Positions 1 to 53,772 of a DNA stretch of 64,000 bases are shown here, one piece after another. The stretch spans positions 91,760,001-91,824,000 of the forward strand of contig NC_088799.1 in the NCBI RefSeq assembly GCF_011386835.1, in the 5' to 3' direction. The translations under genes and the position numbers were made by a program. The notes beneath the pieces are model-generated. The model was not told where the DNA came from and ran no database searches. It saw only the letters and a program-made list of their open reading frames with translations. How positions within the stretch are numbered: position 1 is the first letter of the stretch; each line of letters begins with the position of its first letter. This DNA comes from Chrysemys picta bellii (taxonomy: Eukaryota).

Positions 1-3000
1 CCCTCCACCTGGGGAAAACCCGCTTTGATTGGCTGCCTTCTCCACTTGCCCGCCTGGAAGAGGGAGCAGGCAGAGCCCAGCAGCACTATGTGGCTCCAAT
101 CCCGCCTCTCCTGTGAAAAATGGGTCAGTCTGCTTCCCCCTCCATCCCAGAAATACCAGGCCTGGGAAGGGGGTAACGGGGATGAAGAACCCCTGGGGGA
201 ACAGCAGTGAGGCTGGGGGGTCAGCATTGACTTGGGAGTTGAGGGGGCAGAACTGATTGCTGGGAAGTGTGGGGTTGGGGAGAGCCAGAGTTCGCTAATT
301 AGAATTGTGGGCTTGGGGAGAAGCTGGAAGCTCCATCCAATCCATCAGGCAGCAAGCAGAGCTCCTGCAGCGAGGGTGAGACTCACCTCACTCACTACGT
401 GTGGGAGAGTTGGCCATGCTAATTGGTACATGTGCCTGGGAAAGGAAGAGGGTTCAAAATCAAAAGAGAAGCAAAAATCCACAATAGATTTATAAAAAAA
501 AAAAAAAATCCTCATGATTCCAGGGGGGGAACTGACTCAGATTTTGTAACTCTTGGGGTTGGCAATGAGACGGGCACCCAAATTAGAGGCCACTTCTGAA
601 AATGTGAACCTAACCCCTTTTTGTAGCTCAGCCCCAGCTCCTCTGAGGATAACAACAATCCCTGTTGCACAGGGATGTTGCAGGGTGTATAGATTGATGT
701 TTGTGACACAAGGTGTTCTGGAATGCTATTGTTATTACAATGGAACATGCCAGAGGCACAGAGAAAGCACGGTGCCCCTAAAGCAGTGTGGGGGTAGGTA
801 GGGATGAGGGAAGACAGGAAGTATGGCTCAGTCATGGAAGCATGTGGAAACCTAGAGACCATGCCGTGTAGATTGTCCAGTCCACGAGCCAGTCCAGCAA
901 GTACACTAGAGACTGTTCCTTGGAGTTGTGAGTAAGAAGTAAGAGGGACCCACCAGAGCTTAGTTTACTGCTCGGAGACAAGAAAATTAAATGAAAGCTA
1001 AACACCAGAGAGTAGTCAATGAAACCCTGCTTTGAACATTAGCCCTCTGTGTTCTTAAATGGTGTTTTGCTTCCTGCCCCTCATTCAATCACACAGGGCT
1101 GTGCCCAATACCTTGCACTAATCATTGTTTCTTTGTGTAGATTGGTCAGGAATGTAACAGCCCCATCTGTGTTCTTTAGTGGGAAATTGGATTTAAGGGT
1201 CCTGGCTGAACTGCAGAAATTGATCCATTCTAACAGACTAGTAGTTCTGCTAAGGCTGCAAAAATGGGACCTGTAATTCCCTCACTAGCAGTGGCAACAG
1301 CAGAATCCGTAGCATAAACAAGGGGCCCATTGAACTTAAGCAGCTTTACCCTGACATCATCTAACTCTCTTTAGAGCTCCTTAGATTAAAAGGCCAGATG
1401 AATGACCCTGACTTCCCAAAGCTTGATGCTAGGCAGCCTTCTGGAGGAGACCAGAGACCCTGAACCAAGATTCAGGCCAGACCCCAGCCAGTGAAGCTTG
1501 AGTGCATAGTGATTTTTGTTGAGTCGCCAATGAAGAGAATTCCAACCCCTTCAAAACACTGGGCAGGGGGACTTCCAGAGCAGGGAGTCCTTCACAGAAA
1601 GAGGGGGAGAGATTCTGAAAAGACAAGTGTTGGGAGCAAGAAATGTGGAAGCAGGAACAAATGGAACCAAGTGGAAAGTGCAGGATAGATCACACCAGAA
1701 CCAAAGAGGGGGATAGGGCTTGTGACGGACAACCCAGAAAAACTTACTAGCTGTCTGGCAAGAGGCAGACCTTGTTCACCCTGCTGTCCAGACATAGGCT
1801 GTAGTATATCCATGGTAGTCATCAGAGAGGGAATATCTCCCGGTTCTCCAGCAAGTCATGCTCCATAAGGTGAGAAGAGTCCTGGCATTGGATTTCCATT
1901 ATAAAGAGCCCCACCAGGCCCAAGGGAGAATATTGTCCATGGATACTGTTGCCACCTGTCCAGCTATTCCCATGATCATCCTTTTATTTTATTTTATTAG
2001 AGGTAGCTGTCCTGGAAAATCTGTACAAGTGCTCAGTACACACTGCCAGCTCCCAGTTTTATGGGCTCAAAATAATCCCAGAAGTCCCCCACCTTTTTTT
2101 TTTCTTTTTTTTTAACTTCAGAGGTGGCAACCTTATCCATGGAATGTGGCTGGGTTCCCCTGTGTGAACAGTCACCCAGCTGCTGTATTTTGGACCCAAC
2201 CTTTGGATCCCACATGCTTCCAAGCTTCATGGGTCTGCGCAGAGTCTGGGCACTGGTTCCAAATCTGCCCTTTCAGGCATGCTCTGCTGATCTGGGGAAT
2301 CTGCCTGTCCAATTTATGAATGATGTGAGATTATGAACTCTCTGTATGTGTCTTTACCAAGCTGCAAACTCCATTTTTAACATGCAATAGTTTGCCATCT
2401 CTTTGTCTCCCAGTTGGACTGGAATTCCAATGGTGGCTGGCAAAAGGATAACAAAAGAGGGGTGTTAACTTAAGTGCTTGACCATTGAAATGTAATAGCT
2501 CTAGACCAAAGACTGGCTCTCAGCCAGGAGACCTAGGTTGTCGGAGAGAAGTTGCCTAACAATGAAATCCTCTGGTAGGACTCTGTGGTCACCTGTTAAG
2601 GCTGACCAGGGAGTCACCTCTGAAGGGGCTGGAAGAATATAAAGGGCCAAAGCTGCTGTTTGTGCACAGTCATTCTCTCTCCAGCCATCTTTCACCTGTT
2701 TAAGGTAGGGGAAGCTGCTGCAGGTGCTAGGTGAGATAGAGGGAACCCTGCCGAGCCGACCTGAACACAGATGGTTCTCCAAGGAGTCCCGAGGGAAGGC
2801 TGAGCTACAGTGAGGGGAAGAGCATATCGGTTTTTATTATTTTTGTGTGGATCTGTATATATCTCTCGTGATTAAGTAAAGAGCAACTGCAGCGTAGAGC
2901 CCTGTGCAAAGTGACTGTGTGTGTAACCCAGAAGCCTCGCACCTTCAGTGGGCTTCTGGGAGACGGTGTGTTTAATTACTGAGGTATCTTGGGGGTCAGC

Positions 3001-5595
3001 GATGGAGGTGGGGGCATGAGGCGGGTGGGTTGAGGGGCTCCATTTCTGTGAAGGGGTAACTGTGAGAGTTGGTGCCCAGGAAATGTGCTACAGCCAATTA
3101 ACACCCCCCTCCCCCGGAAGCTTACAACAGTGGGAGTTTCAAGAGGCTTGAATTCCTCTCTCAGCAATCTCGTGAGTGGCCAACAGAGGGCGCTGGATCA
3201 GATCTGTGACAGGGAACTAAAAGGATCTATGCAAGCACTCGGGGGCAGACCACTCCCTGAGTGGAAGTGTCTCTCTCCCAGTGCAAAGCAGAGCAGCATA
3301 GCACCAATGTGCTGGGCGCAAGGGAACCTGGCGATAGGCATGGTCCAAGCAGAGAAATTCACCCTGTTATCTATTTCTTTTCACTCCATTTCCTAGCATC
3401 TAAAGTCCCAGTGCCTGTGGTGGGGGTCGGAGGGAAGTCTATGGGCCAAACAGTTGATTTTCTGGAAGACTAAGGGTAATCGGACCCAAAGTGGCCCTGT
3501 CTGGCCTTTCACCAGCCGCAGTTTAGCTGGGATGGCGAGGAGCTCCACATCATCATCAGCAGAGGACTTGGCATCCTTTCCTTCTCTCCCTTGTGCCCGC
3601 CTGCTCAGTTTTCTCTCCCTGATCTTCACACACACAGTCCCTTTTTTCATCATCTGTCCTATCTCCTCCCTTCCCACTCTCCCTCCAGTGTTGCAACTGA
3701 CCGGCTTGTGACAGGATCTTTGGGCTTTGTGTTTAATTGATTCCCAAGCTGTCTCCATCTTTCAAAAGATAGGCTGAGGCAGGAAGCGTCATGGACTGAA
3801 AACAAAGCCACGTGAGCTGAGTTAGCCTCCATGCCAGCTAACCTAGAACACCGTGTCCCTATAGCTCCCGCTCAGGGTGTCCTTAGAAACGTATTGGGGT
3901 CTCAGTGCTTAGCAACACAAACAATATTTTAAGACGCAGACAAGAGATGGGTCCACTCAGAGCCCCCTTCAAATGTGGGGAAATTCAGATCGAAATGTTG
4001 GGTCTAATTTGGGCCAAAGTTCTCCTGAATGCTGCAGGAGAGCCAGGGGAGTTCCATTTACTTGAGTTCATGTACTTTTATTCTCCACTCACACTGGCTC
4101 CACCCCAGTCGAGCTCCTCCTGATTTCCCCCAGGGTGAGCAGAGTAGATCAAATCTTCTGTTATTTAATGGCGTTTGTTCCCTGGTTTGCACTCTTGATG
4201 CCCCACAAAGGGGTCAGGGCTGTTTTTCTCTTTCCTTCCCTGCTTGCCTCTGCCTACAACAAACTCCCTTCCCTTTCCGTGGCTCTTTAATCTTCTTAGC
4301 CTTGTGAAGGCTGCCGTACATTTCTCACCAGCAATGGGAACAAATGTCCGTTTGTTCTTGTCAGGGGACAGAGAGCACCTGGCCAGCCTTGGCATTTGCC
4401 ATACAAGCAGAGGCTTTGAAGGGAAAGTTGATAAGCCCTTTCAACTTTTTTATGATAATGTTCAGGAATTCTGACTCATACATCTTCAGCAGCTCCCTTG
4501 CATTTTTCTAGTACTAACTCCTATTTGGCTGGAAAGCAATTTTGTTTCGGTGAGTGAGTCTAACCAGAGTAATAGCAATTCAATGGAAAATGTCACTTCT
4601 AAAGGTGTAGATTGCGATCAGTGAATTTGTAGGTAATTTCACTGTGATTATGTAAAGAGAAAGTCATGGACCCTTCACATCTCCAGGCCACGGGTTCGTT
4701 CTGGCATCACTTACTCATGAAGGATTAATGCCAAAGAGCGAGCTGTTAGGACACAGAATGTAGGGAATGGATGGTCGGGGATTGATAATGAGGATATAGA
4801 GTCTTTAACCCATAGAACAGATTTGTTTAAAGTCCAGGCTGGTATTGGCCAAAAATGACTACAATCTGATAGCTGCTCAGTGACCTTTTACAGCAAAAAT
4901 AGGGGTTAGTCGGAGAGCCAGCAGTCCTGAATGCATGAATGCGGAGTGGGTAGGGAGGACAAAGGCAGCAGAGAAGGATGGGTTACGTTTTTGATTTGCT
5001 TTCCTATAGAGCACCAGTACTAATAGGGGAACTGCCCTCCTTTCCCAATTAATGCTCAGTATATAGAGAGGGGCCAACTGTGTGAAGCTTGGATTCGGGG
5101 GGCTCAGCTCTAGAGGTTTGGTTTAGACCCATCTGCAGCAGAAAGCAGAAAGCTCGCCTTCTTATTCATCCCTACAGCATCATGAGTCGTCTTGGTCTCT
5201 ACACAACACTTGAAGGACCAGGTTCCTGCCCTGAGCTGCTTACAATCTAACTCAGACCAACAGAAAACCAGGAACAACCCCAGCACAGGGAGGGTTGGAG
5301 ACCCCTTGGCAAGGCGATTAACATAGGAAAGCAGGAGAAAGAAGTGGGTTGTAAGGAGGGAAGTGAAAGCAAAATACCCTTAGTTATTCTGAAAGATCCC
5401 TTATGCAGATAGCTAATAGCTAGAAATCACTGAACACAGCCCTCATTCAGAGGGCGTGTGCGCAAAAAGCATTCAAAACCCAAGGCTAGAAAATGAATTT
5501 GTTGAGGGTAAGTGACTCAGCAGAGCCCTGCTCCTCTTTCCTCCGTCTTAAACGTGGCTGCAGTCAGAGAGGATTTATTCTTGGTTCCCCCAGTC

Positions 5596-8500
5596 ATGGC
5601 TCACTGGAGTCCTTCACTTCTTGGCTACATCGTCTTTTGGAACATTATTCGTTCACGTGTTGCTTTTCCAACAGGAGCCCCAGCATCAGCCTGTGAGAAT
5701 ATGATGCCTGTGCATATGGGGGTCCAGCCCCAGCCAAGTCCAGCCCCCTATGAGATCCAGATTGATGTATCTTCCTTCGTGAACAGGCAGCCGATTAATG
5801 GTAATTAAGTTCCAACGTCTTAACTGGATTGGTAAAATTCACTTAAAATCCATGATTTCTTCATAGTTTTGTTTGCATTTGGCATGCTTTCCGTGTAAAC
5901 GGATCAGTATTATTAGTGAGCTTCTCTTTTTCACCATGTTTTCTCCCTAAAATGTGTTTAGTAAGTTTCTGTTTAGTGAAATGAATTAAAACAACTGTGA
6001 GCAGATCAGCAGGAGAGGATCAGGAGAAACAAACTGAGAACTACATGGAGATGAGAAGCTGACGTTACAAACGCTATGCAAGTTATTTTAAAGTCTGCCA
6101 GGTCTGTATGCCAATCAAGTAATCATGATATGGCTGCATTCTGTTATAGTGACGCTGATAATCTAGTGATGAATCAGACAAGGGTTAGGCCCTCAGAGGA
6201 TGAATCCAGCATCTGGCAGGATTGGGCCAATGCCATGAAATCAGTGGATGATTTTAACTGGCACCAGATAGCTAAGGGAATTCTTAACTGGTGCAGGGCT
6301 ATCACCGATAGTTCGGTGATTTGTTTCTGTACCAAGGAAGGCAGTAAGCAGAAATTAACATCTGCTAGCTCTTTGGTGGCCCATTTGAAATGAGTTGGTG
6401 GTCAGATGCATAACTGAGGCTAGAGAAGAGATGTGACCTTCCCACGTCCCATAGTCAGTGGCAGAGTTGGGAATGGAAGCCGGGAGGCCTGACTCCCTGT
6501 CCTGTATACTAGTAACAAGACCATCCTTCCCCCTGCTGACTCACGCCCGGTTACTTGCTTAGCGTACAGTTCAATGTCTTCTTCATTTCCTTTCAGTCCC
6601 AATATGTCTCTGATGTCTTTCTTCTTCACCTCTCGCTATGGCTACCATCTGACCCTCTCTGCCCTCCTTTTCCAAGGGCTCAGACTCCCTCTCTTCACTT
6701 CTCCCCCAGTCCATTCCTCTTCTGGTTCTTTGTTACCCTTGATCCTAGAACGTAAGAATGGCCATACTGGGTCAGACCAATGGTCCATCTAAGCCAGTAT
6801 GTGGCTAGTGCCAGATGTGTCAGAGGACATGAACAGAACAGGGCAAATTTGAATGATCCATCCAGTTTCAGTCAGTCCCAGCTTCTAATAGTCAGAGGTT
6901 TAGGGACACCCAAAGCTTGCAATAGTGTCCCTGACCATCTTGGGTAATAGCCATTGATGGACCTATCCTGCAGGAACTTATCTAATTCTTTTCTGAACCC
7001 AGTTATACTTTCAGCCTTCGCAACATTCCCAGGCAACGAGTTCCACAGGTTGACTGTGTGTTGTGTGAAGAAATACTTGCCTTGGTTTGTTGTAAACCTG
7101 CTGCTTGTTAATTTCACGGAGTGACCCCTGGGTCTTGTGTCAAGTGAAGGGGTAAATAACACTTCCCAATTCACTTTCTCCACACCAGTCATGATTTTAT
7201 AGACCTCTATCATATCCCCCCAGTTCTCCTTAGTCATCTCTTTTCTAAACTGAACAATCCCAGTTCTTTTAATTGCTCCTCATCTGGAAGCTGTTCCATA
7301 CCTTTCATGATTTTCATTGCCCTTCTCTGCACTGTTTCCAATTCGAATGTATCTTTTCTTGAGAAGAGGTGACCATCACTGCCTGGCGTATTCAGTCCTG
7401 TCTCCTTGTACACCCTGGCTGCCTCCTGGAGGTGGAATGTGCTGCTGTTCAAGGCCAGGAAAGGAGGAGGAAGCCTTAGGTGCCGGCTCAGAAGTCCCAG
7501 GAGCTGCGAGAACAAGCGAAAGAGGAAAACTTGCTCCTTGTCCCTAGCCCTGCTTATAATCTCAATGGGAGCGGCACCCAGTTACCTGAGGGCAGAATTT
7601 TATCTAAAGCCTTTTTCACAGTCAGTCTCTGTGGTACTTATATTGCCCCAGGCCCATAGTAAAGGAGCACCTCACCCAACTTGCAGTCCCCTGTGAGACA
7701 GAGAGCTAGTATCATCCTTGTTTTGCAGATGGGGAAATCAAGGCACAGATAGACTAAGTGACCAGCCCAGGGTGCCATGGGAAGTCAGTGGCAAAGAGGG
7801 AATTGAGCCAGCGTCTCCTAAGTCCCAGGCTGGCACGCTAATCACTGGGCTAGTTTTGCAGACACAGCTGATGTGCAAAGATATAGCTGGTATATCTTTG
7901 GGGTTATTAATGGTAGTGACAGTTTGAGAAGCCAGCCCCAGCTATGGGTGACTAACATGCGACAGATGCATATACTATCTTCCAGTTCAGATTGTAGGGC
8001 CGGGATACAGAGGCCTGTTGCTGGAAGCTCGCACCTTTGGCTCCACTGCTGCACTTGGCACTTGGCAGAATCCTGCCAATAACACTAAGTTCTTACAGGT
8101 AAGCTGGGAGCTTCTCATTTCTAGCCTTATGGGGCATCGTGGCTTAATAAATACTGTGAAATTAAATGGCGCGAGAGAAACAACATGCAACAGCAAAGGC
8201 AGCTGGGAAACAGGAGACACGATGAGCTGTCCTGGGATCTCAGCGGTGGAGCAGGCAAGCTGGATCCCCAGGAAAGCAGCGTGCTCTGCCTCCCTCTCCC
8301 CCATACACACTGTGAGTTGTAGGAGACTACACACAGATGTGATGCGACCTGAGTAACCATTAACTCTCCCAGTGCTCGCTGCTTGGAAGGGCACAGAAGG
8401 GGTTACACCTCCATCCAGCTGGGCAGAATCCACAGGTTTGCAGGGCGTGGATTTCTTTCTCCACTGTTCCCTGTTCATATCACAGCTCTCTGGAGACCTC

Positions 8501-11500
8501 AGAATGGGGGATGGAGGGGCCGGTGCTTGAGGCCTGTGACTTCAGTGGAGCAGGGTGGGAGCATTTGGATTGATCAGGGCACGTTGCATGGGATGTCTAT
8601 TACCCAGGCTTTTGATGAGGGGAGGGGGATATCGTTGCTAAGGAAACAGGGTTTTTTTGTTTGTTTGTTTGTTTGTTTACCAATTGATTGTACATGCACC
8701 TAGTGCAGTGGTCCCCAACCTTTTTCTGTGGTAACCCCCCCTCACCTGTAATGCAATCTGTCCCGTGGGGCTGGAAGCAGAAGCCACAGCCAGGAGTCAA
8801 AGCCATGGTCTTGGCAGGGCCAGGGCCGGTGCAAGGAAGTTTTGCGCCCTAGGTGAAACTTCCACCTTGCGCCCCCCCCCAGCCCTGCAGCAGCTCCCCG
8901 CCCCCCTCTCTGCCTTGAGGCTCCCCCCTCCCCCGCGGCAGCTCCCTCCCCCAGCTCACCTCTGCTTCTCCCACCTCCCAGGCTTGCAGCTCCAATCAGC
9001 TGTTTGGCACCGTAAGCCTGGCAGGGGAGGAGAATTAGAATGGGGGTGGCATGCTCGGGGAGGGGGTGAAGCAGAGGTGAGCTGGGGTGGGGAGCTGCCG
9101 CATGGCTTCCTGGGCCAGGGGGGTGGGGAGCCGCCGCGGGGAGGGGAGGGGAGCTGCCGCAGGGTTCCCCACCCCAGCTCACCTCTGCTACGCCCCCTCC
9201 CCGAGCACACCGCCCCCCGCCGGCAATGACAGTAATTGCATGGAGTGGCCGCTGCGCTGGGAGAGGGAGTCTGAGCCGCACGTGTCAGTGCGCCGCCGGC
9301 AGCCCAACCCAGGAATGCTGTAAAAAAAAAAAAATTGGGGGCACCGCTGTTTGGCGCCCCCCAAATCTTGGCGCCCTAGGCAACCGCCTAGTTTGCCTTA
9401 ATGGTAGCACCGGCCCTGGCTGGGGCCGGAGTTGGGGGCAGAATGGGGTTGGGTGGTGTTCCCTCCCCACCCCCAATGGGGGCTGGTCCCAAGGCCCACT
9501 GCTCCCCCCGCCCCAAATGTTCCTTCTGTATCACCGCAGGGGAGCACTCTCCAGTTTGGGGATGTGTGTGACAGGTACACTATTCATTGTAACTAAACAA
9601 GTAATACATGGATTGATATTCTTTTTTTTTTTGCAGTGCTCTGGAAACCCAAAAGGTGCGATTACTCATTCTAACACCGAGTTAAAAACAAGCCTGACCA
9701 CTTATACCTGGCTGCCCCCAATCTCTGGTTGCCCTGCCGTTATTACATTCATGTAAGTAGCTTCATGAGAGAGTTCCCTTTTAAATGAAATCCCCTCCCC
9801 CTCCAATGGACATCTCAAACACGTTTTCTTCTCTTTTCTCTACCTATACATAATACAGTCAAACAGTTCAGCCGTTTAATATAGGGCAGGATTTTCAAAA
9901 GCACCTGAGTGATTCCAGAGCATAAGCCCCATTGACTTTCACGATCTTGTGCTCCTAAGCCACTTAGGTGCTTCTAAAAATGTCACCCACAATACATTAG
10001 GGGCTCAATCAGCAGCAGGGTCTCCCCAGACAAGTGAAAGCTGCACGTAACTAATGAGCGCTGATTCACACCATTCGGATTACAAATGATCTTAAAGCAG
10101 AAGAATGTTGCTATACTGCAGGAATAGTATTCTGATCCTTTCTGGGAGTGGAAGGATCTTCAGTTGGGAAGCCTTCTGAAAATGTCAGCCGCAGCTCACT
10201 TTTCTGTGTGCAAGACAGGGTGGATTCCCTTTTCCATGAGGTTAGGCTTACATTACCATTTGCTCATGAATTTATGAGCAAAGCAGCAATGCCATCACAG
10301 AAGGGCTACAATGAGTTACTGGAATATCTTTGTAGGGTGGGAGGGGGAATTCTTCCCATTTTATAACCATGTTCCACTGTTCTGTTTCCTTTTGAACAGG
10401 GCAACTGTAGCACAGTCTCGTGAAGTTTATTGGCTCGGTATCAAATCCAAAGTGATCTGGAGAGGTGAGTAATTAGTGAATGTATCATTCCAATTTAAGG
10501 CAGCGGATTGTGTAGCTAACTGCCATTAATGCAAATAGGAGTTAAAGATGCATCAAGAGAAAAGCCACTGATGTATCAGAAATGCAGAGAGTGCTAGTCT
10601 GCGTGCAGAGTGCTCTGAAATTATTTTTCTTCACCATACAAGGGATCAGTTCAGTTCACTAAGCTGGAATTTACATATGTAGCTCTTTGTCTCTCCTCCT
10701 AAATCATTCACTCCAGCCCCCTAAACTTTGTTGCTCTTCTCTGAACTCCTTCCAGTCTGAGAATATATTTCTGCTAACATGGTGCACAGAACTAAGTGAA
10801 ATATCCCAGGTCTCCCATGAAGATATGACTCGTATTATGGAGTAAAATGTCAGCCACTGCTACTGGCTAACGGGAGTCTTGCACAGAGAAGAAAAAATAG
10901 ACTAGTTACTCTAAGAGCTGACTCTCTCCTCCATCTGGAAAGGGGTAAAAGAGTAACTTGCCCCACTAGGAATTTGTGTATGCAAATATCGAAGTCATCA
11001 GAAGGGTAGAGAGCTGGTTTTGTTTCTGGTTCTTCTAGGGAATGAGTATCTTCCTCTCAACTCAGCTAATCAGAAAACTTTAACTGCGTTGAGGGCCAAA
11101 TGATGCATACTAATGTAACCCTACTGGAAAGGGTGCCGTGTATGCTGTTGCACAGCCTAGGACAAAAAATGAGCCACTATCTCTCTTTCAGTGTTAATTA
11201 TATGAAGACTTAATATCTGCAGTTGCTCAAATCTGGGTCTCAGGGCGCACTTGTGGGAGCTCAGGGTTCAGCCAGTGGGGCTGAAGCCCCGAAAGGCACC
11301 TCCCATGGGGCTGAGGCCCCAAACCCTGGCAGGTATGCCTTGGCTCTTGAACTTCTGAAGATTGTTGTATGTGGCTCAGAGGCTCAGTAAATTTGGCCAC
11401 CCCGGCATATAGCATGCTAGTCTCCAAGCCTGTTCAGTAACACAGCCTAGCAGTAGTGATCCAAACTACGCAGGAACAGACGTCTGCTAAAGTGGCTCCA

Positions 11501-13538
11501 ACATAGGTATTAGGTAGCTCCAACATTGTTAATTAGGTGGCTACTTATGACACATTTGAGGCAGGGAGTGGGAATCAGGCCTCCTAAATTCTGTTGGTGA
11601 CTCAGCATGTGATCATGGATAATTCATGTAAACCATGCCTCAGTTTCACCATCAGTAAAACAAGGATAGGCAATACCCCCCTCACACGGATACTGGGGCT
11701 TAATTAATTAATGTTTGTAATGTGCTTGGAGTTATTGAGTAAATAAAAGGAAGTAAGATACTGTTACCGCCTCTTCAATACAAAAACAAAAGCTCATTTT
11801 CAAGCTGATTGCTCATTAGGAAGAACAATTTAAAGGCCATTATTTTAGAGATTGTCTCTGCAACTTGCTTAGGGATCATTAATCCAGGGCTTTAGTGTGC
11901 AGTTAAGTGTTGTTCTTGTCTTACATAAGAGAAACAGTACTAATGACTTATAATCTGCCCTTACATGCAGGTGGCTTGGGTGATGGTAGTAGCCTGTGAT
12001 ATACAGGAGGTCAGACTAGATCAGGGGTTGGCAACCTTTCAGAAGCGGTGTGCCGAGTCTTAATTTATTCACTCTAATTTAAGGTTTCGCGTGCCAGTAA
12101 TACATTTTAACCTTTTTAGAAGGTCTCTTTCTATAAGTTTATAATATATAACTCAACTATTGTTGTATATAAAGTAAATAAGGTTTTTAAAATGTTTAAG
12201 ACGCTTCATTTAAAATTAAATTAAAATGCAGAGCCCCCCGGACCGGTCGCCAGGACCCGGGCAGTGTGAGTGCCACTGAAAATCAGCTCGCGTGCCACCT
12301 TCGGCACGCGTGCCATAGGTTGCCTACCCCTGAACTAGATGATCTAAGGGTCCCTGCAGGTCTTAAACGCTGACTGTATAGGGGAATTGTATAAGAGTTT
12401 GAGGGATGGTAGGAGGTCTCATTTTAAGTGGAAAAGACAAGCTCTGAAACCACAAATCATACTTAATTCAAATGCCTAGAGTGAAGGGGATTTGGAACTA
12501 TTCCCACTGAGTTAGCTAAGGATCAAGCCTAGGTAATTCACCAGAAAAGCACTATCTAGTTGAAGTGCTTTGACACAAACAGCACAGGTAGTATCCAAAT
12601 TTTACATTAAGTGTGTCTCATCCAAAAATCAGCTCTCTTTATTGGTATTCATTTATTCTGTAGCTGCTTGGTTTAACAGCAAGAACACTTTTGAAATGTA
12701 GTTAATCCGTTCTAGTCTGACTCATGGAATGACTTCCCTGAGACAGGAGCATTATATTTTAAAACCAACATAATAAATGATAGGATTGGCCCTATCAGTC
12801 AGAAAGGGATTCAAAAGCAAGACACAAAATGTCTCAAGTTATCAGTAAGGACACATAAGGCAACTGTACACCCTTTGAAAACCTGCAACTACACAGAACA
12901 TACAAGGAGTGAGGAAGTCATTTGATATGGTTGTCAGATTAATAATCAGGGTAGTAGTATAAAATGGCTAGAGCAGGAGACTAGGCACTTGTCTCACTGT
13001 GCTCCATTTTGCAACTGACTTACTGTGGGAGCTGGAGCACGTCATACAACCTCTCTATGCTCTGGGTTTTCCATCTAATCTAGGTACAATGCACACATCT
13101 CAATCGTTGTATAAAACATGCGGTAAATACACAGTAGTTTGAAATGTTTCTTAGAAGTTAATGAATGTCCTGTTCATTGCTTCCACAATCAACTGTGCTT
13201 AGACTTTGTTAATCCATAGATGTTGGTTGTCTGAAAAACAACAGTGATTACTAGGTACTGCCACTGATTGTGAATAGGAAGTGAACAAGTGGCAACTACT
13301 CGTTGCTTTTTCCCTATAGTTAAAACAGGGTTAAAGGGGGGGGAAACTGAGGACCACACTAGTATCAATGTTGCCTCACCTGTGTAATGAAAACTAGTTC
13401 TAAATTGAAGACATTTATTTTGTTTTCCAAACTACAGATTCTAAAGCTACATGTGGTGCTGAGAAGCTTACATGGACAGTAATTATTGTGACAATGATGT
13501 CTTTCCACTTACTGCTTTTACCTGGCTACTTATATTAA
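5596..13538 (+). CDS. Reeler-domain-only protein (putative defense protein / FRRS1-N-terminal-like), 199 aa, signal peptide + GPI-type tail; join(5596..5800,7986..8098,9637..9752,10400..10464,13438..13538)
   Basis: Five exons with canonical GT-AG sites and matching phases (1,0,2,1) total 600 nt with no internal stop. Protein: [199 protein letters not shown]. Reeler hallmarks: FPxGAPxxAC..MxPxH, PQ..P.PY.I, GLLLEAR, C.G....ITH, TW.PP, F.ATV.Q...YW. Strong Kozak (GTCATGG); AATAAA at 13576-13581. The last exon is the least certain. Confidence 0.85.
6746..7395 (-). mobile_element. CR1 LINE 3' fragment (ORF2 C-terminus + 3' UTR) in Reeler-gene intron 1
   Basis: Minus ORFs: [18 protein letters not shown]...[12 protein letters not shown] and [10 protein letters not shown]...RGHSVKL...[14 protein letters not shown], typical of CR1 ORF2. 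Confidence 0.9.
8821..9418. mobile_element. GC-rich hAT-type MITE nested in an older MITE (from about 8706)
   Basis: TIRs CAGGGCCGGTGC / GCACCGGCCCTG. The host element begins CAGTGGTCCCCAACC near 8706. The TSD is degenerate. Confidence 0.65.
12022..12332 (+). mobile_element. hAT (Charlie-like) MITE inserted in a CR1 3' tail
   Basis: TIRs CAGGGGTTGGCAACC / GGTTGCCTACCCCTG; 8-bp TSD GACTAGAT/AACTAGAT. Confidence 0.85.
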
Positions 13539-13643
13539 GTGTTGGCGTTTCAGAGGATCTATTAAACGGCTAAGGAATAAATACAGACCATGTATACAAT
13601 CACTGCATTTGCTCCTGCCATGAAGTGGATTCTGGAAGCCTAA

Positions 13644-13847
13644 GGCCTTTGTCTACACACGTTATACTGTTTTTAAACTATACCAATATAGTTAAAGTAA
13701 TGCAGCCCTCTAGTGCACAGTTATACTGGTACAGCTTATTCCCTACAGGCACATTATATAAATAGAACAATGTCCTCTCTCTGGGTATTATTCTCAACCC
13801 TAACCAATGCCATTTTAATATTACATGATTTGTATGTAGACTAGGAC
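13644..13847. mobile_element. PIF/Harbinger-type MITE
   Basis: Ends GGCCTTTGTCTACA / TGTAGACTAGGAC, flanked by TAA on both sides. Confidence 0.6.
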
Positions 13848-14744: not shown

Positions 14745-16528
14745 TTAGTCAATGTTCTCCAATCCCTGAAAAATAAAAAGTGAAACACTCTTAACTATCC
14801 ATACAGAATTTACACCAATCTCACCGCCCCGTTTACGTTTCTCAGAAAGTACACATCTTTTTCTAACCATAAATTCCTCAGCAGAATAAGAAGTTAGCAT
14901 TGTCCAAAAAACATGCAATTTTTTAAAAAAATGGGGGAAAGAATCACAAAAGCACAATTAAGCAAACTCTAGTGATAGCATCACAGAAGTTACAAAGGGA
15001 AGAGACCCAATTCATCAAGGCAACCCTGTGCAAATTATACCATCCCTACATACCGTGACTGAAGGTGATCTGAAAAGGTTTTTCAAAGGAATGTTCTTTA
15101 CATTAGACATTTAGGTCTTGTCTGCTCAGGAACACTCTATGCTAACTGCAGAACCAGTGAAATTACATCATTTTAGTGGAGAGTGAAAAGTTGAGCAATT
15201 CAGAGGGAAAGGAATTTTGTCACTGTTTAAAATTTGTGTTAACCCCTAATTTCACTTTAATGACTAAATAAGGCTTGGGGAAAGGATGTAACAAATTAAA
15301 CATTCCAACCCCTTCTACTAATGCGACAGCTCATAATACACATGCTTAGAAACATCCCAGAGACCCCTAGAAAAAAACAGACCAGGCCATTTCTAATAAA
15401 ATATTACAGGCTTTCTTTGTATGTTATAAAGCAACAAATACAGGCACTCAAAAAAGCCTTTTGCATGTCACCTTTAAGTACTAGCAGTAGCAAGTCTTCA
15501 CTGAAGATATCAAGTGAGAATGAAAAGACACTAAATGCTAAAAGAGTCAGGCTTGGGGTGTGCACAGAAGATTGCATCCAGATTTGAACCCATCAAAGCA
15601 AGCCAGTCCACTGATTAGCTGTATGACAATGCATTAAAAATAAGCACTTGTTGTCTGCACCAGTTAGAAGGCTAAGTTCTACCCTCAGTTACCATCAAGA
15701 CTGAAGTAACAGAGAGCAGAACCCAGCCAAGGGTCTAACTCAACTCAAACAATAGCTAGTGCTCAATGCAGAGACATACAACTGTCATTTTCAACTCCTG
15801 GTTAGTTGAATTTTGAGGCGTTTGGATTTTGCAGAGTTCAGCTGCCTTGTATTTATAGATCTGCTCCGTCCTAGGTCGGAAGGAATTTACCTTGGACCGA
15901 TAGTATTCATTAACCCCCGACAGTCGCCTGTCTCTTTCCATCAGGTACCACTGGTAGGGATGGCGAGCGATTCTCTTTTCCTGCACACACAGAGCAACGT
16001 GTCACCGCACTGGGAGAACGGGGCTTGGACACGGCGCGGAGAGGGGAGCAGGATCGTGCCGCCTGGCCTGGACAGCGAGCTTGGGCTCGGACAAGGCCCC
16101 AAGTAGTTCCCGGGGTGGGGGAAGGGGAGCGGCGCTCTCTGCTGGACTCCAGCGGCTCGCTCTGCACAAGCACCGGGCAAGGGGTCCGTCCCCCGCGTCA
16201 GCTGCCCCCCCCCGCCCACTCCCCCCCCAGCACCCGCTCCCCTCCCCCGCCAGCGCCCGCTCCCCCCCAGCACCCGCTCCCCTCCCCCGCCAGCGCCCGC
16301 TCCTCCCCCAGCACCCGCTCCCCCCCCGCCAGCGCCCGCTCTCCGCGTCACCCCCCCGCTCCCGCTCCCTTTCCGTCCGGAGCCGGCCCAGCCCCCCGCC
16401 CCTCCTGGCTCCGCCCCGGCCCTGACCTTGCCCCCGTTGAGGTATCTGTGGATGTGGATGAGGGACACGCCGGGGATGGTCAGGAACAGGCCCATAATGG
16501 CCGCGCTGGGCAGGATCTCGTACCACAT
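14745..16528 (-). CDS. NDUFA1: NADH:ubiquinone oxidoreductase subunit A1 (MWFE), 70 aa; complement(join(14745..14765,15891..15980,16427..16528))
   Basis: [34 protein letters not shown] / [30 protein letters not shown] / GLENID*. Closely resembles human MWFE. Phase-0 GT-AG introns; exon sizes 102/90/21. Confidence 0.98.
16228..16341. repeat. GC-rich tandem repeat (about 40-bp unit, about 3 copies) in NDUFA1 intron 1
   Basis: CAGCACCCGCTCCCCTCCCCCGCCAGCGCCCGCTCCCCCC starts at 16228, 16268 and 16309. Confidence 0.85.
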
Positions 16529-17039
16529 CCCGGCGTCCGCTCGAGCCGCTACCGACCGCTACGCTAGACAGCCGACCCCAGGCCTACAAACGCGCATGCG
16601 CAAGCAGCCCCAAGTCGCCTGCGCATTAGCCCCGCCTCCGGACTACCCACAGGGCACCGCCTACCCATCATGCATCACGACGGCGCGCCGCCGCCATTGT
16701 GCCGAGGCAAAGGCCGCTGAAGGGTCACGAGTGCAACAGCGATAGGGCGGAGCTAGGCCCCCCGTGACTGTGGCGGTGGCGGCGCTTGGCGTCCCACTAG
16801 GCCTGCCACGGCTGCCGGGAACTTCCCGTGGCCCCGACGACCTGCTGGGAGCATGCCGGGAGCGGTCGCCCCCGTTAGCCCCAGTGCATGCCGGGAACTC
16901 CCAGCCCCACAGTGCTGTATCCTTGAGGAGGCGCCGCCGGCGCCAGGCGGCGGTTCGTGGCCCTTTAAGGCTGTGATCCCGCGAGAGGCGCAGCAGCCAA
17001 TGGGCGAGAGGGGGCGTGGCTCGCTGGCCGGAGAACGGG
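16529..17039. promoter_or_regulatory. CpG-island bidirectional promoter shared by NDUFA1 and UPF3B
   Basis: 511 bp between divergent ATGs, CpG-rich. Perfect NRF1 palindrome GCGCATGCGC at 16592-16601; GC box near 16629; ZNF143/SBS-like GCATGCCGGGA at 16851-16861 and 16886-16896; YY1-like GCCGCCAT near 16690; CCAAT at 16997-17001. Confidence 0.85.
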
Positions 17040-18855
17040 ATGAAGGAGGATAAGGAGAACACTAGGCCTAAAGAGAAGCGGGCGCCCGGGGGCCCCCTGG
17101 ATCTCAGGGGGGGCGGGGAGCCCGAGCGGCTCGAGCGGCCTAAGGACAAGAAGGAGACGCTCAGCAAGGTGAGGCTGGGGGCGGGGCCCTCGGGACCGCT
17201 GGGACTGAGGCTCCCTAGCTCGGGGCTGGGGCTGGCGGCGCTTCCCCCTCTCCCGTGCCCCGGCCTGCGCTCCTGCCGCCTGCCCTGGGCCCTGGCGGGC
17301 TGCTCCGTAGAGCCCAGCGCCTCAACCCCCGGACGGGGCCTCTGGACGCTGTTCTGGGGATGGGGCCAGGCAGGCCCAGGGCGCCCGGGCGAGTATCTGG
17401 CGGTGTCTCGTTTTTCGGTGCCCAGCCTGAGATGCCGAGATCTGATGGTTTGCCCAGGCAGGTGCTGAGCTCGCGTGGCGCTTTGAGTGTTGGCAGCACT
17501 CTGCAGAACCAAGGCCTGGGTGGCATCCGGACCCACTGGCCACCACGTGGGAAATGTTTGGCCCAAGTCACTTGCCCAAAGTAGCAGTTAGTGGTAGACT
17601 AGGGAACGGCGCTCAGGAATCTTGCCTTTGAATTCCTTGCTCTAATCACTTAGGGCCTGAGACTGCTCCTCCTGGGAAGTGAGGAGGAGTTTTTTCTTTG
17701 ACTTAAGTGGGTGCTGGATCAGGCCCCCAGTCTTTCTGTGCTTTCTTGAAGAATTGTGATGTTTCTAGATCACTCAGTACTTAAGATATAAAAATGGCAT
17801 TGAAGCCAGGCTGGGTGAAATAGATTTCCACATTCTTGACATGAGCCACAGTTGTTGACTTAGCTTTGTTATCCTATGGCATCTTTCAGGTAACCTCTGA
17901 AATAAAGTCGGGGCAGACAATAATTTTACGCTCTTAAAATTCTTGTGTTTAAGGTGGTAATTCGACGCTTGCCTCCTAGCTTGACTAAGGAACAACTTGA
18001 AGAACATCTTCAGCCTTTGCCTGAACATGACTATTTTGAATTCTTTGCTAATGATTCCAGGTACAACACTTCAGGTTTCAATTTTTTCATGTAACTCTAG
18101 TATGTCAATTAATGTACACTTGTCTATAGTGTGTATAGTTAAAATCATCAGCAACAAGCCAGCTTCATTTCCTTACACATTGCTATTTTTCTGTCCTTTT
18201 GCAGTTTGTATCCTCACATGTTTTCCAGAGCATACATCAACTTTAAAAACCAAGAAGACATAGTACTGTTCAGGGATCGCTTTGATGGTTATGTTTTTGT
18301 TGATCACAAAGGCAAGTAAACATAAAACTTGGTTATATACTAAAATGTTTGTATGTCAGCTATATTAAATGAGATTTAGGAGATTGTCAGGTAGTTTAGT
18401 CCCAATTTTTTTTTTCTTTTAGTGCCATAACTATACTTGGGCACCATATATCGAGATTAAATACGGGGTGCTTGCATGTAGTCTCTTCGATAAACTTCAT
18501 GACACTTTTTGTAGTTAGATTTTAAATACAGCTTAAAATAATAACAATAAAATCCCCTTTTTAAAGCAATATTAGTGGTAAATTTTCTAAACAAACTGCT
18601 TAAGAGGAATTCTAGCCCATTAGTAACTTACATGTATATAATCTAAGTTTAGTTAACTGTTATTTCAATATGTTATGTGGTTTTTTGGGAGCATTCAGCA
18701 CCTAATACTAAAGTCTTATAATACTAAGGCTGATATCCTCTAACACACACATTCTGGGTGAAATTCTGGCTCCATGGGAGTCTTGTGCACTGTTTCCAAT
18801 TGACTTCCAGAATTTCACCTGAAACTCTTGTTTTATTTGGCTATTTTTATAGATA

Positions 18856-52764: not shown

Positions 52765-53772
52765 AGTTATGAGATGCAAAACTGGTTGGAAAACCATTCC
52801 CGGAGAGTAGTATTCAGTGGTTCACAGTCATGCTGGAAGGGCATAACGAGTGGGGTCCCGTAGGGATCAGTTCTGGTTCTGTTCAGTATCTTCATCAAAG
52901 ATTTAGATAATGGCATAGAGAGACACCAAGCTGGGACGGGTTGCAAGTGCTTTGAAAGATAGAATTAAAATTCAAAATGATCTGGACAAACTGGAGAAAT
53001 GGTCTGAAGTAAATAGGATGAAATTTAATAAAGACAAATGCAAAGTACTCCACTTAGGAAGGAACAATCAGTTGCACACATACAAAATGGGAAATGACTG
53101 CCTAGGAAGGAGTGCTGCAAAAAGGGATTTGGGGATCATAGTGGACCACAAACTAAATATGAGTCAACAGTGTAACTCTGTTGCAAAAAAAGCGAACATC
53201 ATTCTGGGATGTATTAGCAGGAGTGTTGAAGCAAGACATGAGAAGTAATTCTTCCGCTGTACTCCATGCTGATTAGGCCTCAACTGGAGTATTGTGTCCA
53301 ATTCTGGGTGCCACATTTCAGGAAGGATGTGGACAAATTTGAGAGAATCCAGAGAAGAGCAACAAAAACGATTAAAGGTCTAGAAAACATGAGCTATGAG
53401 GGAAGATTGAAAAAATTGGGTTTGTTTAGTCTGGAAAAGAGAAGACTGAGGTGGGACATAACAGTTTTCAAGTATGTAAATGGTTGTTACAAGGAGGAGG
53501 GTGAAAAATTGTTTTTCTTAACCTCTGAGGATAGGACAAGAAGCAATGGGCTTAAATTGCAGCAAGGGAGGTTTAGGTTGGACATTAGAAAAAACTTTCT
53601 AACTGTCAGGGTGCCTAGGGAGGTTGTAGAATCTCCATCACTGGAGATTTTAAAGAGCAAGTTAGCCAAACACCTGTCAGGGATGGTCTAGATAATACTT
53701 AGTCCTACCATGAGTGCAGGGGACTGGACTAGATGACCTCTCGAGGTCCCTTCCAGTCCTATGATTCTATGA
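52765..53772 (+). mobile_element. CR1 LINE 3' fragment, relatively young, with stops and frameshifts
   Basis: ORFs IQNDLDKLEKWSEVNRMKFNKDKCKVLHLG and RPQLEYCVQFW.PHFRKDVDK.ERIQRRATK; 3' tail CCCTTCCAGTCCTATGATTCTATGA. Confidence 0.93.

What the first reader, a model, noticed from the sequence alone, without database searches (positions are those of the whole stretch)
5596..13538. Intact, unnamed Reeler-only gene with a signal peptide and GPI-type tail next to NDUFA1
Seen: five exons splice in frame to 199 aa, comprising an N-terminal hydrophobic leader, one complete Reeler domain (4 Cys, one N-glycan sequon NNT) and a C-terminus [29 protein letters not shown]. That tail has small residues, a spacer and a hydrophobic end, as in a GPI signal. 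The ORF track shows only fragments of it. Known: vertebrate Reeler domains are mostly parts of larger proteins (reelin, F-spondin, FRRS1); stand-alone Reeler proteins (Hdd11/Noduler) are insect microbe-binding immune factors. In human, as recalled, the gene on this side of NDUFA1 is AKAP14, and I saw no AKAP14 exons here. Inference: a surface-anchored innate-immunity or matrix-binding protein kept in turtles and probably absent from mammals.
Basis: partly seen in the sequence, partly recalled or inferred. Interest (0 to 1): 0.78.

Follow-up and report, generated by a model that had tools for sequence, protein, structure and literature searches.

The report
Small GPI-type Reeler-domain gene beside NDUFA1
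The five-exon, 199-residue Reeler-domain gene is real and transcribed, but it is the turtle copy of an already predicted, never studied vertebrate gene ("putative defense protein 3 / Hdd11-like") that no bird or mammal protein matched.

Summary
There are five + strand exons (5596-5800, 7986-8098, 9637-9752, 10400-10464, 13438-13538), all with AG/GT borders, giving 597 coding bases and 199 aa. Contigs from probable RNA runs of two organisms join exons 2-3-4-5 at the predicted junctions.

The gene is not new. Its whole-codon translation matches Trachemys "putative defense protein Hdd11-like" isoform X2 at 161 of 161 residues. Orthologues of 190-205 aa occur in lamprey, sharks, teleosts (zebrafish name si:dkey-251i10.2), lungfish, amphibians, squamates, tuatara, alligator and turtles. 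No bird or mammal appeared among the hits.

AKAP14 is not replaced. In Mauremys, Caretta, alligator and Podarcis the order is AKAP14(-), Reeler(+), NDUFA1(-), UPF3B(+), and AKAP14 should lie just left of this window.

The layout of signal peptide, Reeler domain, small-residue linker and C-terminal hydrophobic end is shared by 64 of 69 orthologues. That fits a GPI signal, but only by rule of thumb. dN/dS is 0.15-0.36 in deep comparisons and 0.5-0.8 within turtles.

An immune role is unsupported: fish papers report it falling after parasite or inflammatory challenge. This scan had not noted the gene before in this genome. Interest is low to moderate.

The parts
5596..5800 (+). Exon 1: start codon, signal-peptide-like leader (residues 1-23) and start of the Reeler domain (FPTGAP..., Cys33). 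It ends in phase 1.
   Evidence: Pfam Reeler profile positions 1-34, 18.1 bits. Collinear with exon 1 of the alligator, Podarcis, Mauremys and Caretta orthologues.
5673..5674 (+). AG of an internal alternative acceptor inside exon 1 (ttttccaacag|GAGCC). In the Mauremys isoform models, upstream 5' exons appear to join here and bypass the leader.
   Evidence: Sequence. Isoforms P0231 and P0230 begin ...GAPTSAC directly after foreign N-termini. There is no RNA evidence for this in the window's species.
7986..8098 (+). Exon 2: Reeler core ([16 protein letters not shown]...) with the sequon N100-N-T102.
   Evidence: Spliced contig in runs X1 and X4. 37 of 37 residues identical to Trachemys P0226.
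9637..9752 (+). Exon 3: Reeler core with Cys107, the AITHSN motif and Cys138.
   Evidence: Pfam Reeler profile positions 83-113, 17.7 bits. Junction 8098|9637 is in the contigs of X1 and X4.
10400..10464 (+). Exon 4: last Reeler strands ([21 protein letters not shown]).
   Evidence: Exon scan. The contigs of X1 and X4 fit junction 9752|10400; the aligner placed it 3 nt to the left, on an ambiguous CA.
13438..13538 (+). Exon 5: linker [12 protein letters not shown] (candidate GPI attachment residues S168 or C172), hydrophobic end of residues 180-199, and the TAA stop.
   Evidence: Junction 10464|13438 is in X1, X3 and X4. The tail is conserved across the family.
13561..13581 (+). Two polyadenylation-signal hexamers: ATTAAA at 13561-13566 and AATAAA at 13576-13581, 23-43 nt after the stop.
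   Evidence: Read directly from the sequence. Their use was not shown, because contigs run on past them.
5328..5541 (+). Upstream block just before the start codon that is conserved with alligator; probably the proximal promoter and 5' UTR.
   Evidence: tblastx collinearity, L001 9718-9930 against window 5328-5541. The promoter role is an inference.

Best explanation
This is a functional, transcribed gene. It is the turtle orthologue of an old vertebrate gene that annotation pipelines call 'putative defense protein 3 / Hdd11-like' (zebrafish si:dkey-251i10.2). It encodes a 199-residue precursor with an N-terminal leader, one complete Reeler beta-sandwich, a short linker rich in small residues, and a hydrophobic end that runs to the last residue.

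Shown here: the exon structure, splicing of exons 2-5, orthology, conserved gene order, the Reeler fold, and purifying selection over deep time.

Inferred: the precursor enters the ER. The C-terminal ~25-30 residues are then exchanged for a GPI anchor, at S168 or, more attractively, C172. The Reeler domain ends up on the outer leaflet of the cell membrane. Cys138 probably bonds Cys172, tying the linker back to the domain.

By analogy with the heparin-binding F-spondin reeler domain and the glycan-binding insect proteins, the likeliest activity is binding of a polyanionic glycan or matrix ligand at the cell surface. The fish reports come from fins, skin and whole larvae. An inducible immune-effector role is not supported.

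No bird or mammal orthologue was found in the protein searches, which suggests the gene was lost in both groups.
For: Gene model and phases.

Splicing: one 323-nt contig in X1 (organism A) and in X4 (organism B) joins E2-E3-E4-E5, and the E4/E5 junction is also in X3. These runs hold only 0.10-0.20 of the locus words against 0.80-0.84 for the genomic runs, as expected of RNA.

Orthology: turtle proteins of 193-200 aa match at 88-95% on exon 3. There are 64 relatives with the same length and Pfam domain. Trachemys P0226 is identical in 33/33, 37/37, 38/38, 21/21 and 32/32 whole codons of E1-E5.

Domain: Reeler scores 89-95 bits on P0226, P0228 and P0005 against a cut-off of 21. The AlphaFold model of P0228 has pLDDT 93.3. 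Its best structural matches are the F-spondin reeler domains 2ZOT, 3COO and 2ZOU, with E 3e-8 and TM 0.64-0.67; a profile search also finds Spondin-1 at E 9e-9.

Synteny: the order AKAP28 | Reeler | MWFE | UPF3 holds in alligator, Podarcis, Mauremys and Caretta.

Selection: dN/dS is 0.15-0.36 between turtles, alligator and lizard.

GPI-type end: 64 of 69 orthologues end in a hydrophobic stretch with 0-1 charged residues in the last 12. The median uncharged run is 18 aa, and 54% are under 19 aa. 64 of 65 have a small-residue triplet 5-13 aa upstream, against 61% at control positions.

Cys138 and Cys172 are both present in 38 orthologues and both absent in 30 (with three sharks re-read by eye).
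Against: - The run type 'RNA' is a guess by the tool, and contigs cannot show the strand.
- The E1/E2 junction was not covered.
- In this species the leader ends R-S-R-V-A where other turtles have C-P-C, S-L-C or C-L-F. That puts Arg at -3 and -5 of the expected cleavage site, which is unfavourable for signal peptidase.
- No dedicated signal-peptide or GPI predictor was available. My small-triplet rule passes 61% of control positions.
- Within turtles dN/dS is 0.5-0.8, on only 5-13 synonymous changes, so recent constraint is not demonstrated.
- The disulfide is inferred from co-occurrence that reflects only two or three independent evolutionary events.
- No ligand, tissue or phenotype is known. 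The fish expression data are entries in differential-expression lists, and I did not verify by accession that they refer to this orthologue.
- Absence from birds and mammals rests on protein collections, not on genome searches.
Confidence: 0.75

Rival explanations
1. It is a cell-surface or shed pattern-recognition protein of innate immunity. It would work like insect Noduler/Hdd11: the Reeler domain binds LPS, lipoteichoic acid or beta-glucan and triggers cellular defence.
For: Sequence relatives at 30-40% identity include invertebrate stand-alone Reeler proteins that carry the 'defense protein' names. Both have a single Reeler domain behind a leader. That the insect proteins bind microbial glycans is established knowledge, recalled rather than tested here.
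Against: The name was transferred by similarity only. In salmon fins the transcript fell about 25-fold after sea-louse attachment, and the authors call it a protein of unknown function (PMC7177938). In zebrafish larvae the protein went down in CuSO4-induced inflammation (PMC7271515). In cichlid fins it appears in a differential-expression list alongside matrix genes such as actinodin, matrilin-4 and thrombospondin-4 (PMC5012078). No induction data exist for any reptile.
Confidence: 0.2
2. The hydrophobic C-terminus is not a GPI signal. The protein is either a single-pass membrane protein with no cytoplasmic tail, or it is secreted with the tail intact or removed by another route.
For: The window's tail is 20 residues long (180-199), and AlphaFold draws it as a helix at 180-199. 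No GPI predictor or experiment was available. My omega-site rule has low specificity, with a 61% pass rate at control positions.
Against: More than half of the orthologues have uncharged ends shorter than 19 residues. The ends contain His, Pro, Gln and Ser and lack flanking basic residues after the stretch. Sea turtles keep an intact gene with the tail cut to 13 residues by a micro-inversion. That is too short for a stable membrane span but acceptable for a GPI signal.
Confidence: 0.2
3. The turtle copy is drifting towards loss, as already happened in birds and mammals. The ORF would be intact only because turtles evolve slowly.
For: Pairwise dN/dS within turtles is 0.51 (window against Mauremys) and 0.81 (window against Caretta), not clearly below 1. 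The leader is atypical in this species (R-S-R). The tail is truncated in sea turtles and in Chelonoidis.
Against: The frame and all eight splice sites are intact here. The ORF is also intact in the Emydidae, Geoemydidae, Testudinidae, Chelydridae, Cheloniidae and Trionychidae sampled. Transcripts are spliced in two organisms. Exons 2-3 carry few replacements: against alligator, Sd is 25.5 and Nd is 17.5 over 75 codons. Most replacements fall in the leader and tail, which evolve fast in all secreted proteins.
Confidence: 0.05
4. These are the first exons of a longer FRRS1-like gene (Reeler + DOMON + cytochrome b561).
For: Some isoform models of the orthologues are auto-named 'putative ferric-chelate reductase 1'. 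True FRRS1 is a detectable relative: Amia FRRS1 matches at E 4e-16 and 34% identity.
Against: Exon 5 ends in a stop followed by two poly(A) signals. NDUFA1 converges from the other strand, and its stop lies 1.2 kb away. Orthologues from lamprey to turtles all end at 190-205 aa with the same tail. The gene tables of four species list no DOMON or b561 product at the locus.
Confidence: 0.01

Closest known systems
Predicted vertebrate proteins 'putative defense protein 3 / Hdd11-like' (e.g. Trachemys scripta XP_034637152.1 = P0226, Mauremys reevesii XP_039343981.1 = P0228, Pelodiscus XP_006115469.1 = P0005; zebrafish si:dkey-251i10.2)
   Same: This is the same gene. It has the same five coding exons, a length of 193-200 aa, the same leader + Reeler + hydrophobic end, and the same neighbours AKAP14, NDUFA1 and UPF3B. 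Identity is 100% to Trachemys over the 161 comparable whole codons, and 82-92% per residue to the other turtles.
   Different: Differences are small. In the window the codon split between E3 and E4 reads Met, where the Trachemys model has Arg. The leader's c-region is R-S-R. Sea turtles and Chelonoidis have a tail 6-7 residues shorter.
Insect stand-alone Reeler proteins (Hdd11, Noduler, DFP-1/2/3)
   Same: Both have a single Reeler domain behind a signal peptide and about the same size. They are detectable sequence relatives, with invertebrate hits at 30-40% identity.
   Different: As recalled, the insect proteins are soluble haemolymph factors induced by microbes. The vertebrate family adds a C-terminal hydrophobic GPI-type end and, in fish reports, goes down on challenge. 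Microbe binding has not been tested for any vertebrate member.
Reeler (Reelin-N) domain of F-spondin, PDB 2ZOT / 2ZOU / 3COO
   Same: It is the best structural match of the modelled orthologue (E 3e-8, TM 0.64-0.67 on the target). It is also the only solved relative found by profile search (E 9e-9).
   Different: Identity is only 17-20%. In F-spondin the domain is the N-terminal part of a large secreted matrix protein, followed by spondin and TSR domains. Here it is the whole mature protein.
FRRS1 / SDR2 (ferric-chelate reductase 1)
   Same: It has an N-terminal Reeler domain and is related at about 34% identity (Amia FRRS1, E 4e-16). Pipelines name some isoforms of this gene after it.
   Different: FRRS1 continues into DOMON and cytochrome b561 domains (about 590 aa). 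This gene stops after the Reeler domain plus tail and lies at a different locus.

Membership tests
Reeler domain (Pfam PF02014) | Match to the family HMM above the curated cut-off of 21 bits over most of the 131-position profile | tested here: met
Exon by exon in the window: E1 scores 18.1 bits (profile 1-34) and E3 scores 17.7 bits (profile 83-113), in collinear order. The natural Trachemys protein P0226, identical to the window over 161 whole codons, scores 89.4 bits over profile 4-130.
Reeler domain (Pfam PF02014) | Beta-sandwich fold like the solved reeler domain of F-spondin | tested here: met
   The AlphaFold model of orthologue P0228 (about 90% identical to the window protein) has pLDDT 93.3. 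The Foldseek top eight hits are all F-spondin reeler chains.
Vertebrate 'putative defense protein 3 / Hdd11-like' orthologue group | About 190-205 aa with leader + one Reeler domain + hydrophobic C-terminal end | tested here: met
   The window protein has 199 aa and the same architecture. 64 of 69 orthologues share the hydrophobic end.
Vertebrate 'putative defense protein 3 / Hdd11-like' orthologue group | Position between AKAP14 and NDUFA1/UPF3B in sauropsids, convergent with NDUFA1 | tested here: met
   NDUFA1 (-) and the UPF3B start (+, 17040) lie to the right of the gene in the window. The same order holds in L001, L002, L005 and L006. AKAP14 itself is outside the window, by collinearity with L001.
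GPI-anchored proteins | Cleavable N-terminal signal peptide | tested here: inconclusive
   A hydrophobic core at residues 8-18 is present, and the orthologue is modelled with a helix at 6-19. However, the c-region here is R-S-R-V-A, with Arg at -3. No SignalP was available.
GPI-anchored proteins | C-terminal signal: small omega, omega+1 and omega+2 residues, a polar spacer of 5-10 residues, and a hydrophobic stretch ending at the C-terminus with no cytoplasmic tail | tested here: met
   Candidates are S168-K-A or C172-G-A, with a spacer up to W179 and a hydrophobic stretch at 180-199. The pattern is family-wide. This is a rule of thumb only; the control pass rate of the triplet rule is 61%.
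GPI-anchored proteins | Release from membranes by PI-PLC, or an anchor detected chemically | not testable with these tools
   An experiment is needed.
Insect Hdd11/Noduler immune proteins | Induced by microbial challenge | tested here: not met
   Literature on probable fish orthologues only: about 25-fold down in lice-infested salmon fin (PMC7177938) and down in inflamed zebrafish larvae (PMC7271515). There are no reptile data.
Insect Hdd11/Noduler immune proteins | Binds LPS, lipoteichoic acid or beta-1,3-glucan | not testable with these tools
   A binding assay is needed.
FRRS1 / SDR2 | Reeler domain followed by DOMON and cytochrome b561 domains in one product | tested here: not met
   The stop is at 13536-13538, poly(A) signals follow, and NDUFA1 converges 1.2 kb downstream. 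Orthologue products are 193-200 aa with Reeler as the only Pfam family.

The most novel reading that the evidence does not exclude
The family would be an unstudied, ancient vertebrate cell-surface molecule. A lone Reeler domain would be held on the outer membrane leaflet by a GPI anchor attached to a disulfide-bonded cysteine (C172 bonded to C138), a geometry I recall from Thy-1. It would act in matrix or glycan recognition in skin and fin mesenchyme rather than in immunity. It would have been lost independently in birds and in mammals from the otherwise conserved AKAP14-NDUFA1 interval.
Probability: 0.3. Interest if true: 0.45.

Novelty: already known. Interest (0 to 1): 0.3.

Why it matters
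For annotating this genome the result is routine: the window carries the expected orthologue of an already predicted gene.

There is some wider value. The immune-sounding name of this vertebrate family is an untested transfer from insects. The family has a conserved GPI-type architecture that I did not find described in the searchable literature. It occupies a fixed place in the X-conserved gene block (AKAP14-NDUFA1-UPF3B) in sauropsids other than birds, and no bird or mammal orthologue turned up.

This gives a clean case for studying gene loss in two amniote lineages. It also points to a tractable zebrafish gene (si:dkey-251i10.2) for finding out what a free-standing vertebrate Reeler domain binds.

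Tried and rejected
- **Single-sequence PDB search.** A search with orthologue P0228 found nothing. Only the profile reached Spondin-1.
- **Pfam on exons 2, 4 and 5 alone.** No hit, because the pieces are too short.
- **Exon 4 at 13282-13361.** I first considered this stretch ("[11 protein letters not shown]..."). I rejected it because the frame and acceptor do not fit, whereas 10400-10464 fits in phase, splice signals, sequence and RNA junctions.
- **AKAP14 or NKAP exons in window 1-5596.** None was found. Collinearity with alligator shows the window starts about 1.3 kb short of where the first AKAP14 exon would be.
- **Frog and Pelodiscus loci.** The frog locus (Spea, L004) had no neighbours within 10 kb, and Pelodiscus P0005 was not on record. 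Neither gave synteny.
- **Repeat in intron 4.** An Rfam scan of the heavily transcribed repeat at 11900-12450 gave no family.
- **Literature.** Searches for the gene names found only entries in expression or proteome lists and no functional study.
- **Earlier notes of this scan.** They hold nothing on this gene.

Full report
**1. The observation**

Reading the DNA at the borders and scanning all AG..GT open windows between exons 3 and 5 gives one consistent model:
- E1 5596-5800
- E2 7986-8098
- E3 9637-9752
- E4 10400-10464
- E5 13438-13538

Every acceptor follows a pyrimidine tract and every donor is GTAAG, GTAAT or GTGAG. The phases 0/1/0/2/1 close the frame, and the sum is 597 coding bases plus TAA.

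The product has these features:
- a leader with a hydrophobic core (residues 8-18);
- the conserved start of the mature protein, FPTGAP;
- four cysteines (33, 107, 138, 172);
- one sequon (N100-N-T);
- the end [12 protein letters not shown] followed by 20 mostly hydrophobic residues up to the last residue.

Searched exon by exon, E1 matches positions 1-34 and E3 positions 83-113 of Pfam Reeler (18.1 and 17.7 bits).

**2. Transcription and splicing**

Fourteen runs that the tool guesses to be RNA hold 10-20% of the locus words, against 80-84% for four genomic runs. I laid four of them on 7800-13750.

Run X1 (organism A) and run X4 (organism B) each contain a 323-nt contig made of E2, E3, E4 and the first ~29 nt of E5. 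The junctions are:
- 8098|9637, reported as GT..AG with the cut shifted by 3;
- 9752|10400, which the aligner placed 3 nt to the left on an ambiguous CA;
- 10464|13438, GT..AG, also present in X3.

The same runs also cover 12.6-13.46 kb without splicing. Their contigs run on from 13436 to about 14.1-14.9 kb, which reaches the last exon of NDUFA1. In X10 this cover exists without any cover of E2-E4. I therefore take it for read-through of the strongly expressed, convergent NDUFA1, or for another transcript, and not as part of this gene. Contigs cannot show the strand.

**3. What the gene is**

I ran a word search with the stop-free stretch that contains exon 3, scoring only the exon part. It returned turtle proteins of 193-207 aa that NCBI names "putative defense protein 3".

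A second search with the Pelodiscus protein returned 64 relatives of about 190-205 aa, all with Reeler as their only Pfam family. They come from turtles, alligator, geckos, lizards, snakes, tuatara, lungfish, frogs, many teleosts and sharks.

A filter-free HMMER search of 1.84 billion representatives found 21 clusters at E <= 1e-30. I labelled all of those 21 with cluster look-ups (together with names) and three more, down to about 2e-29. They add salamanders, bichir, chimaera and lamprey, and contain no bird or mammal.

Beyond E of about 1e-25 the hits I labelled are invertebrate stand-alone or multidomain Reeler proteins (hemichordate, echinoderm, mollusc, amphioxus). Vertebrate FRRS1 appears at E 4e-16. 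A goby member carries the zebrafish-derived name si:dkey-251i10.2.

Trachemys scripta isoform X2 (P0226, "putative defense protein Hdd11-like") is identical to the window in every comparable whole codon: 33/33, 37/37, 38/38, 21/21 and 32/32. It differs only at the codon split between E3 and E4 (Met here, Arg there). The window therefore comes from an emydid or a very close relative, and the gene is already predicted in that group.

P0226, P0228 and P0005 score 89-95 bits on Pfam Reeler over the whole profile.

**4. Fold**

I built an AlphaFold model of the Mauremys orthologue P0228 from 146 aligned relatives. Its mean pLDDT is 93.3. It shows a leader helix (6-19), a beta-sandwich (about 25-167), a less confident linker (block 171-180, pLDDT 75) and a terminal helix (180-199).

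Foldseek places the F-spondin reeler domain (2ZOT, 3COO, 2ZOU) in the first eight ranks, with E 3e-8 to 3e-6 and TM 0.64-0.67 on the target. A sequence profile also reaches Spondin-1 at E 9e-9.

**5. Neighbourhood**

- NDUFA1 lies on the - strand, with coding exons at 16528-16427, 15980-15891 and 14765-14745, giving 70 aa. Its stop is 1.2 kb from the Reeler stop, tail to tail.
- UPF3B starts at 17040 on the + strand, 512 bp from the NDUFA1 start, inside a CpG island.
- The gene tables around the orthologues give the same order in alligator, Podarcis, Mauremys reevesii and Caretta: AKAP28-domain gene (-), Reeler (+), MWFE = NDUFA1 (-), UPF3 (+).
- The window is collinear with the alligator locus from window position 749 onward. 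The alligator AKAP14 exons lie further left than the window reaches.
- In a piranha the neighbours are UTP14 and a mitochondrial carrier. As recalled, their human counterparts are also X-linked.
- Two earlier notes of this scan place RPL39 and SEPTIN6 further right in the window. This fits the Xq24-like block as I recall it, but I did not test them.

**6. Selection**

I located the orthologous exons in four loci and summed Nei-Gojobori counts exon by exon without joining them.

| Comparison | dS | dN | dN/dS |
|---|---|---|---|
| Window vs alligator | 0.54 | 0.20 | 0.36 |
| Window vs Podarcis | 0.95 | 0.26 | 0.27 |
| Alligator vs Podarcis | 1.86 | 0.28 | 0.15 |
| Window vs Mauremys | 0.099 | 0.051 | 0.51 (13 synonymous, 22 replacement changes) |
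| Window vs Caretta | 0.042 | 0.034 | 0.81 (5.5 synonymous, 14.5 replacement changes) |

Replacements concentrate in E1 (leader) and E5 (tail), while E2-E3 are well kept. Over deep time the gene is under purifying selection. Within turtles the counts are too small to tell. The intact frame in the six turtle families sampled argues against decay.

**7. The C-terminal end**

- Of 69 full-length orthologues, 64 end in a hydrophobic stretch. The mean Kyte-Doolittle value of the last 15 residues is above 0.9, and there are 0-1 charged residues in the last 12.
- The uncharged terminal run has a median of 18 residues (quartiles 16-22), and 54% are shorter than 19.
- 64 of 65 have a triplet with small residues at positions 1 and 3, located 5-13 residues before the hydrophobic start. 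The same rule passes 61% of random positions in the domain, so this adds little.
- There is never a cytoplasmic tail.

Together this is the textbook layout of a GPI attachment signal. It is poorly suited to a stable membrane span.

Sea turtles support this reading. Their tail is cut to 13 residues because the 24-25 bp between the 6-bp inverted arms CACTTA and TAAGTG (window 13506-13541) is inverted in Caretta, which brings a stop forward. The reverse-complement alignment scores 21-23 of 24, against -3 for the direct alignment. The gene otherwise stays intact there.

The cysteines at 138 and 172 are either both present (38 sequences: chondrichthyans, lungfish, tetrapods) or both absent (30 sequences: ray-finned fishes, lamprey, one frog) (three sharks were misaligned and re-read by eye). 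That suggests a disulfide tying the linker to the domain. It would make C172 (followed by G and A) an attractive attachment residue. As far as I recall, Thy-1 carries its anchor on a disulfide-bonded cysteine. This is a lead, not a test, and only two or three independent losses underlie the pattern.

**8. Function**

No paper in the searchable library studies the vertebrate protein. The mentions are list entries:
- down about 25-fold in salmon fins after sea-louse attachment, "a protein of unknown function" (PMC7177938);
- lower in cichlid egg-spot tissue, in the same list as actinodin-4, matrilin-4 and thrombospondin-4 (PMC5012078);
- present in yellow and brown but not white goldfish skin (PMC9854719);
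- detected as "precursor" in the zebrafish larval proteome, and lowered by CuSO4-induced inflammation (PMC7271515).

I did not verify by accession that each refers to this orthologue, though the fish members of the family carry those names. These hints point to skin and fin tissue and run against an inducible effector.

The best-supported mechanism is therefore a GPI-held Reeler domain that binds a glycan or matrix ligand at the cell surface, by analogy with the heparin-binding F-spondin domain and the glycan-binding insect proteins. I mark this as inference.

**9. Caveats specific to this window**

The leader's c-region reads R-S-R-V-A. Other turtles have C-P-C, S-L-C or C-L-F, and the differences are transitions, two of them TGT/CGT at CpG. 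Arg at -3 is unfavourable for signal peptidase, and I could not check this exon against reads.

Mauremys isoform models start in upstream exons and enter exon 1 at an internal acceptor (AG at 5673-5674), which skips the leader. One such upstream exon is recognisable in the window at 861-900. There is no RNA evidence for it here.

**11. Verdict**

It is wrong on novelty, on the gene being a turtle speciality, and on AKAP14, and the immune role is unsupported.

The gene is an already predicted member of a known domain family. What remains open is what the family does, and that question is of moderate interest.

Noticed in passing
window 13506-13541; L006 21950-21986: The last 24-25 bp of the coding sequence lie between 6-bp inverted arms (CACTTA ... 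TAAGTG). In Caretta the inner segment is inverted (reverse-complement score 21-23 of 24, direct score -3). This creates an earlier stop and shortens the tail by 6-7 residues. Natator and Lepidochelys have the same short end, and so does Chelonoidis, which is not a close relative, so the inversion may be recurrent.
   Followed up: partly
window 12587-13463 and 13436 to about 14900: The probable RNA contigs cover the last ~850 nt of intron 4 without splicing and run on past both poly(A) signals into the NDUFA1 terminal exon. In run X10 this cover exists without any cover of exons 2-4. It is probably NDUFA1 read-through antisense to exon 5, or a separate transcript. The strand is unknown.
   Followed up: partly
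window 11979-12376: An interspersed repeat of about 310 bp in intron 4 has summed contig depth of 4,000-49,000 in all four runs, with many loose ends at 12022 and 12332. It appears to be a very abundant transcribed repeat family. It has no Rfam match.
   Followed up: partly
window 8795-9590: A GC-rich block in intron 2 is open in several frames on both strands. It has depth of roughly 10-420 and several 'opposite strands' joints in the contigs. It is probably a repeated element with inverted parts.
   Followed up: no
window 6872-7581 (- strand): A fragment in intron 1 looks like the C-terminal part of a CR1-type LINE ORF2 (...[15 protein letters not shown]...). A similar piece lies at 53242-53688 (+).
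   Followed up: no
window 16427-17081: The NDUFA1 start (16528, -) and the UPF3B start (17040, +) are 512 bp apart in one CpG island (GC 0.65), with no gene between them. Alligator, Podarcis, Mauremys and Caretta show the same. In human, as recalled, RNF113A lies between these two genes.
   Followed up: partly
window 861-900 (+) and 5673-5674: A short ORF, MPCRLSSPRASPA, matches the alternative first coding exon of Mauremys mutica isoform X2 (P0231). That exon joins an internal acceptor in exon 1 and skips the signal peptide. There is no expression evidence for it in this species.
   Followed up: partly
window 5650-5658: The leader's c-region codons CGT TCA CGT (R-S-R) stand where Caretta has TGT CCA TGT (C-P-C). 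Two of the three changes are CpG transitions, and they put arginines next to the expected signal-peptidase site.
   Followed up: partly
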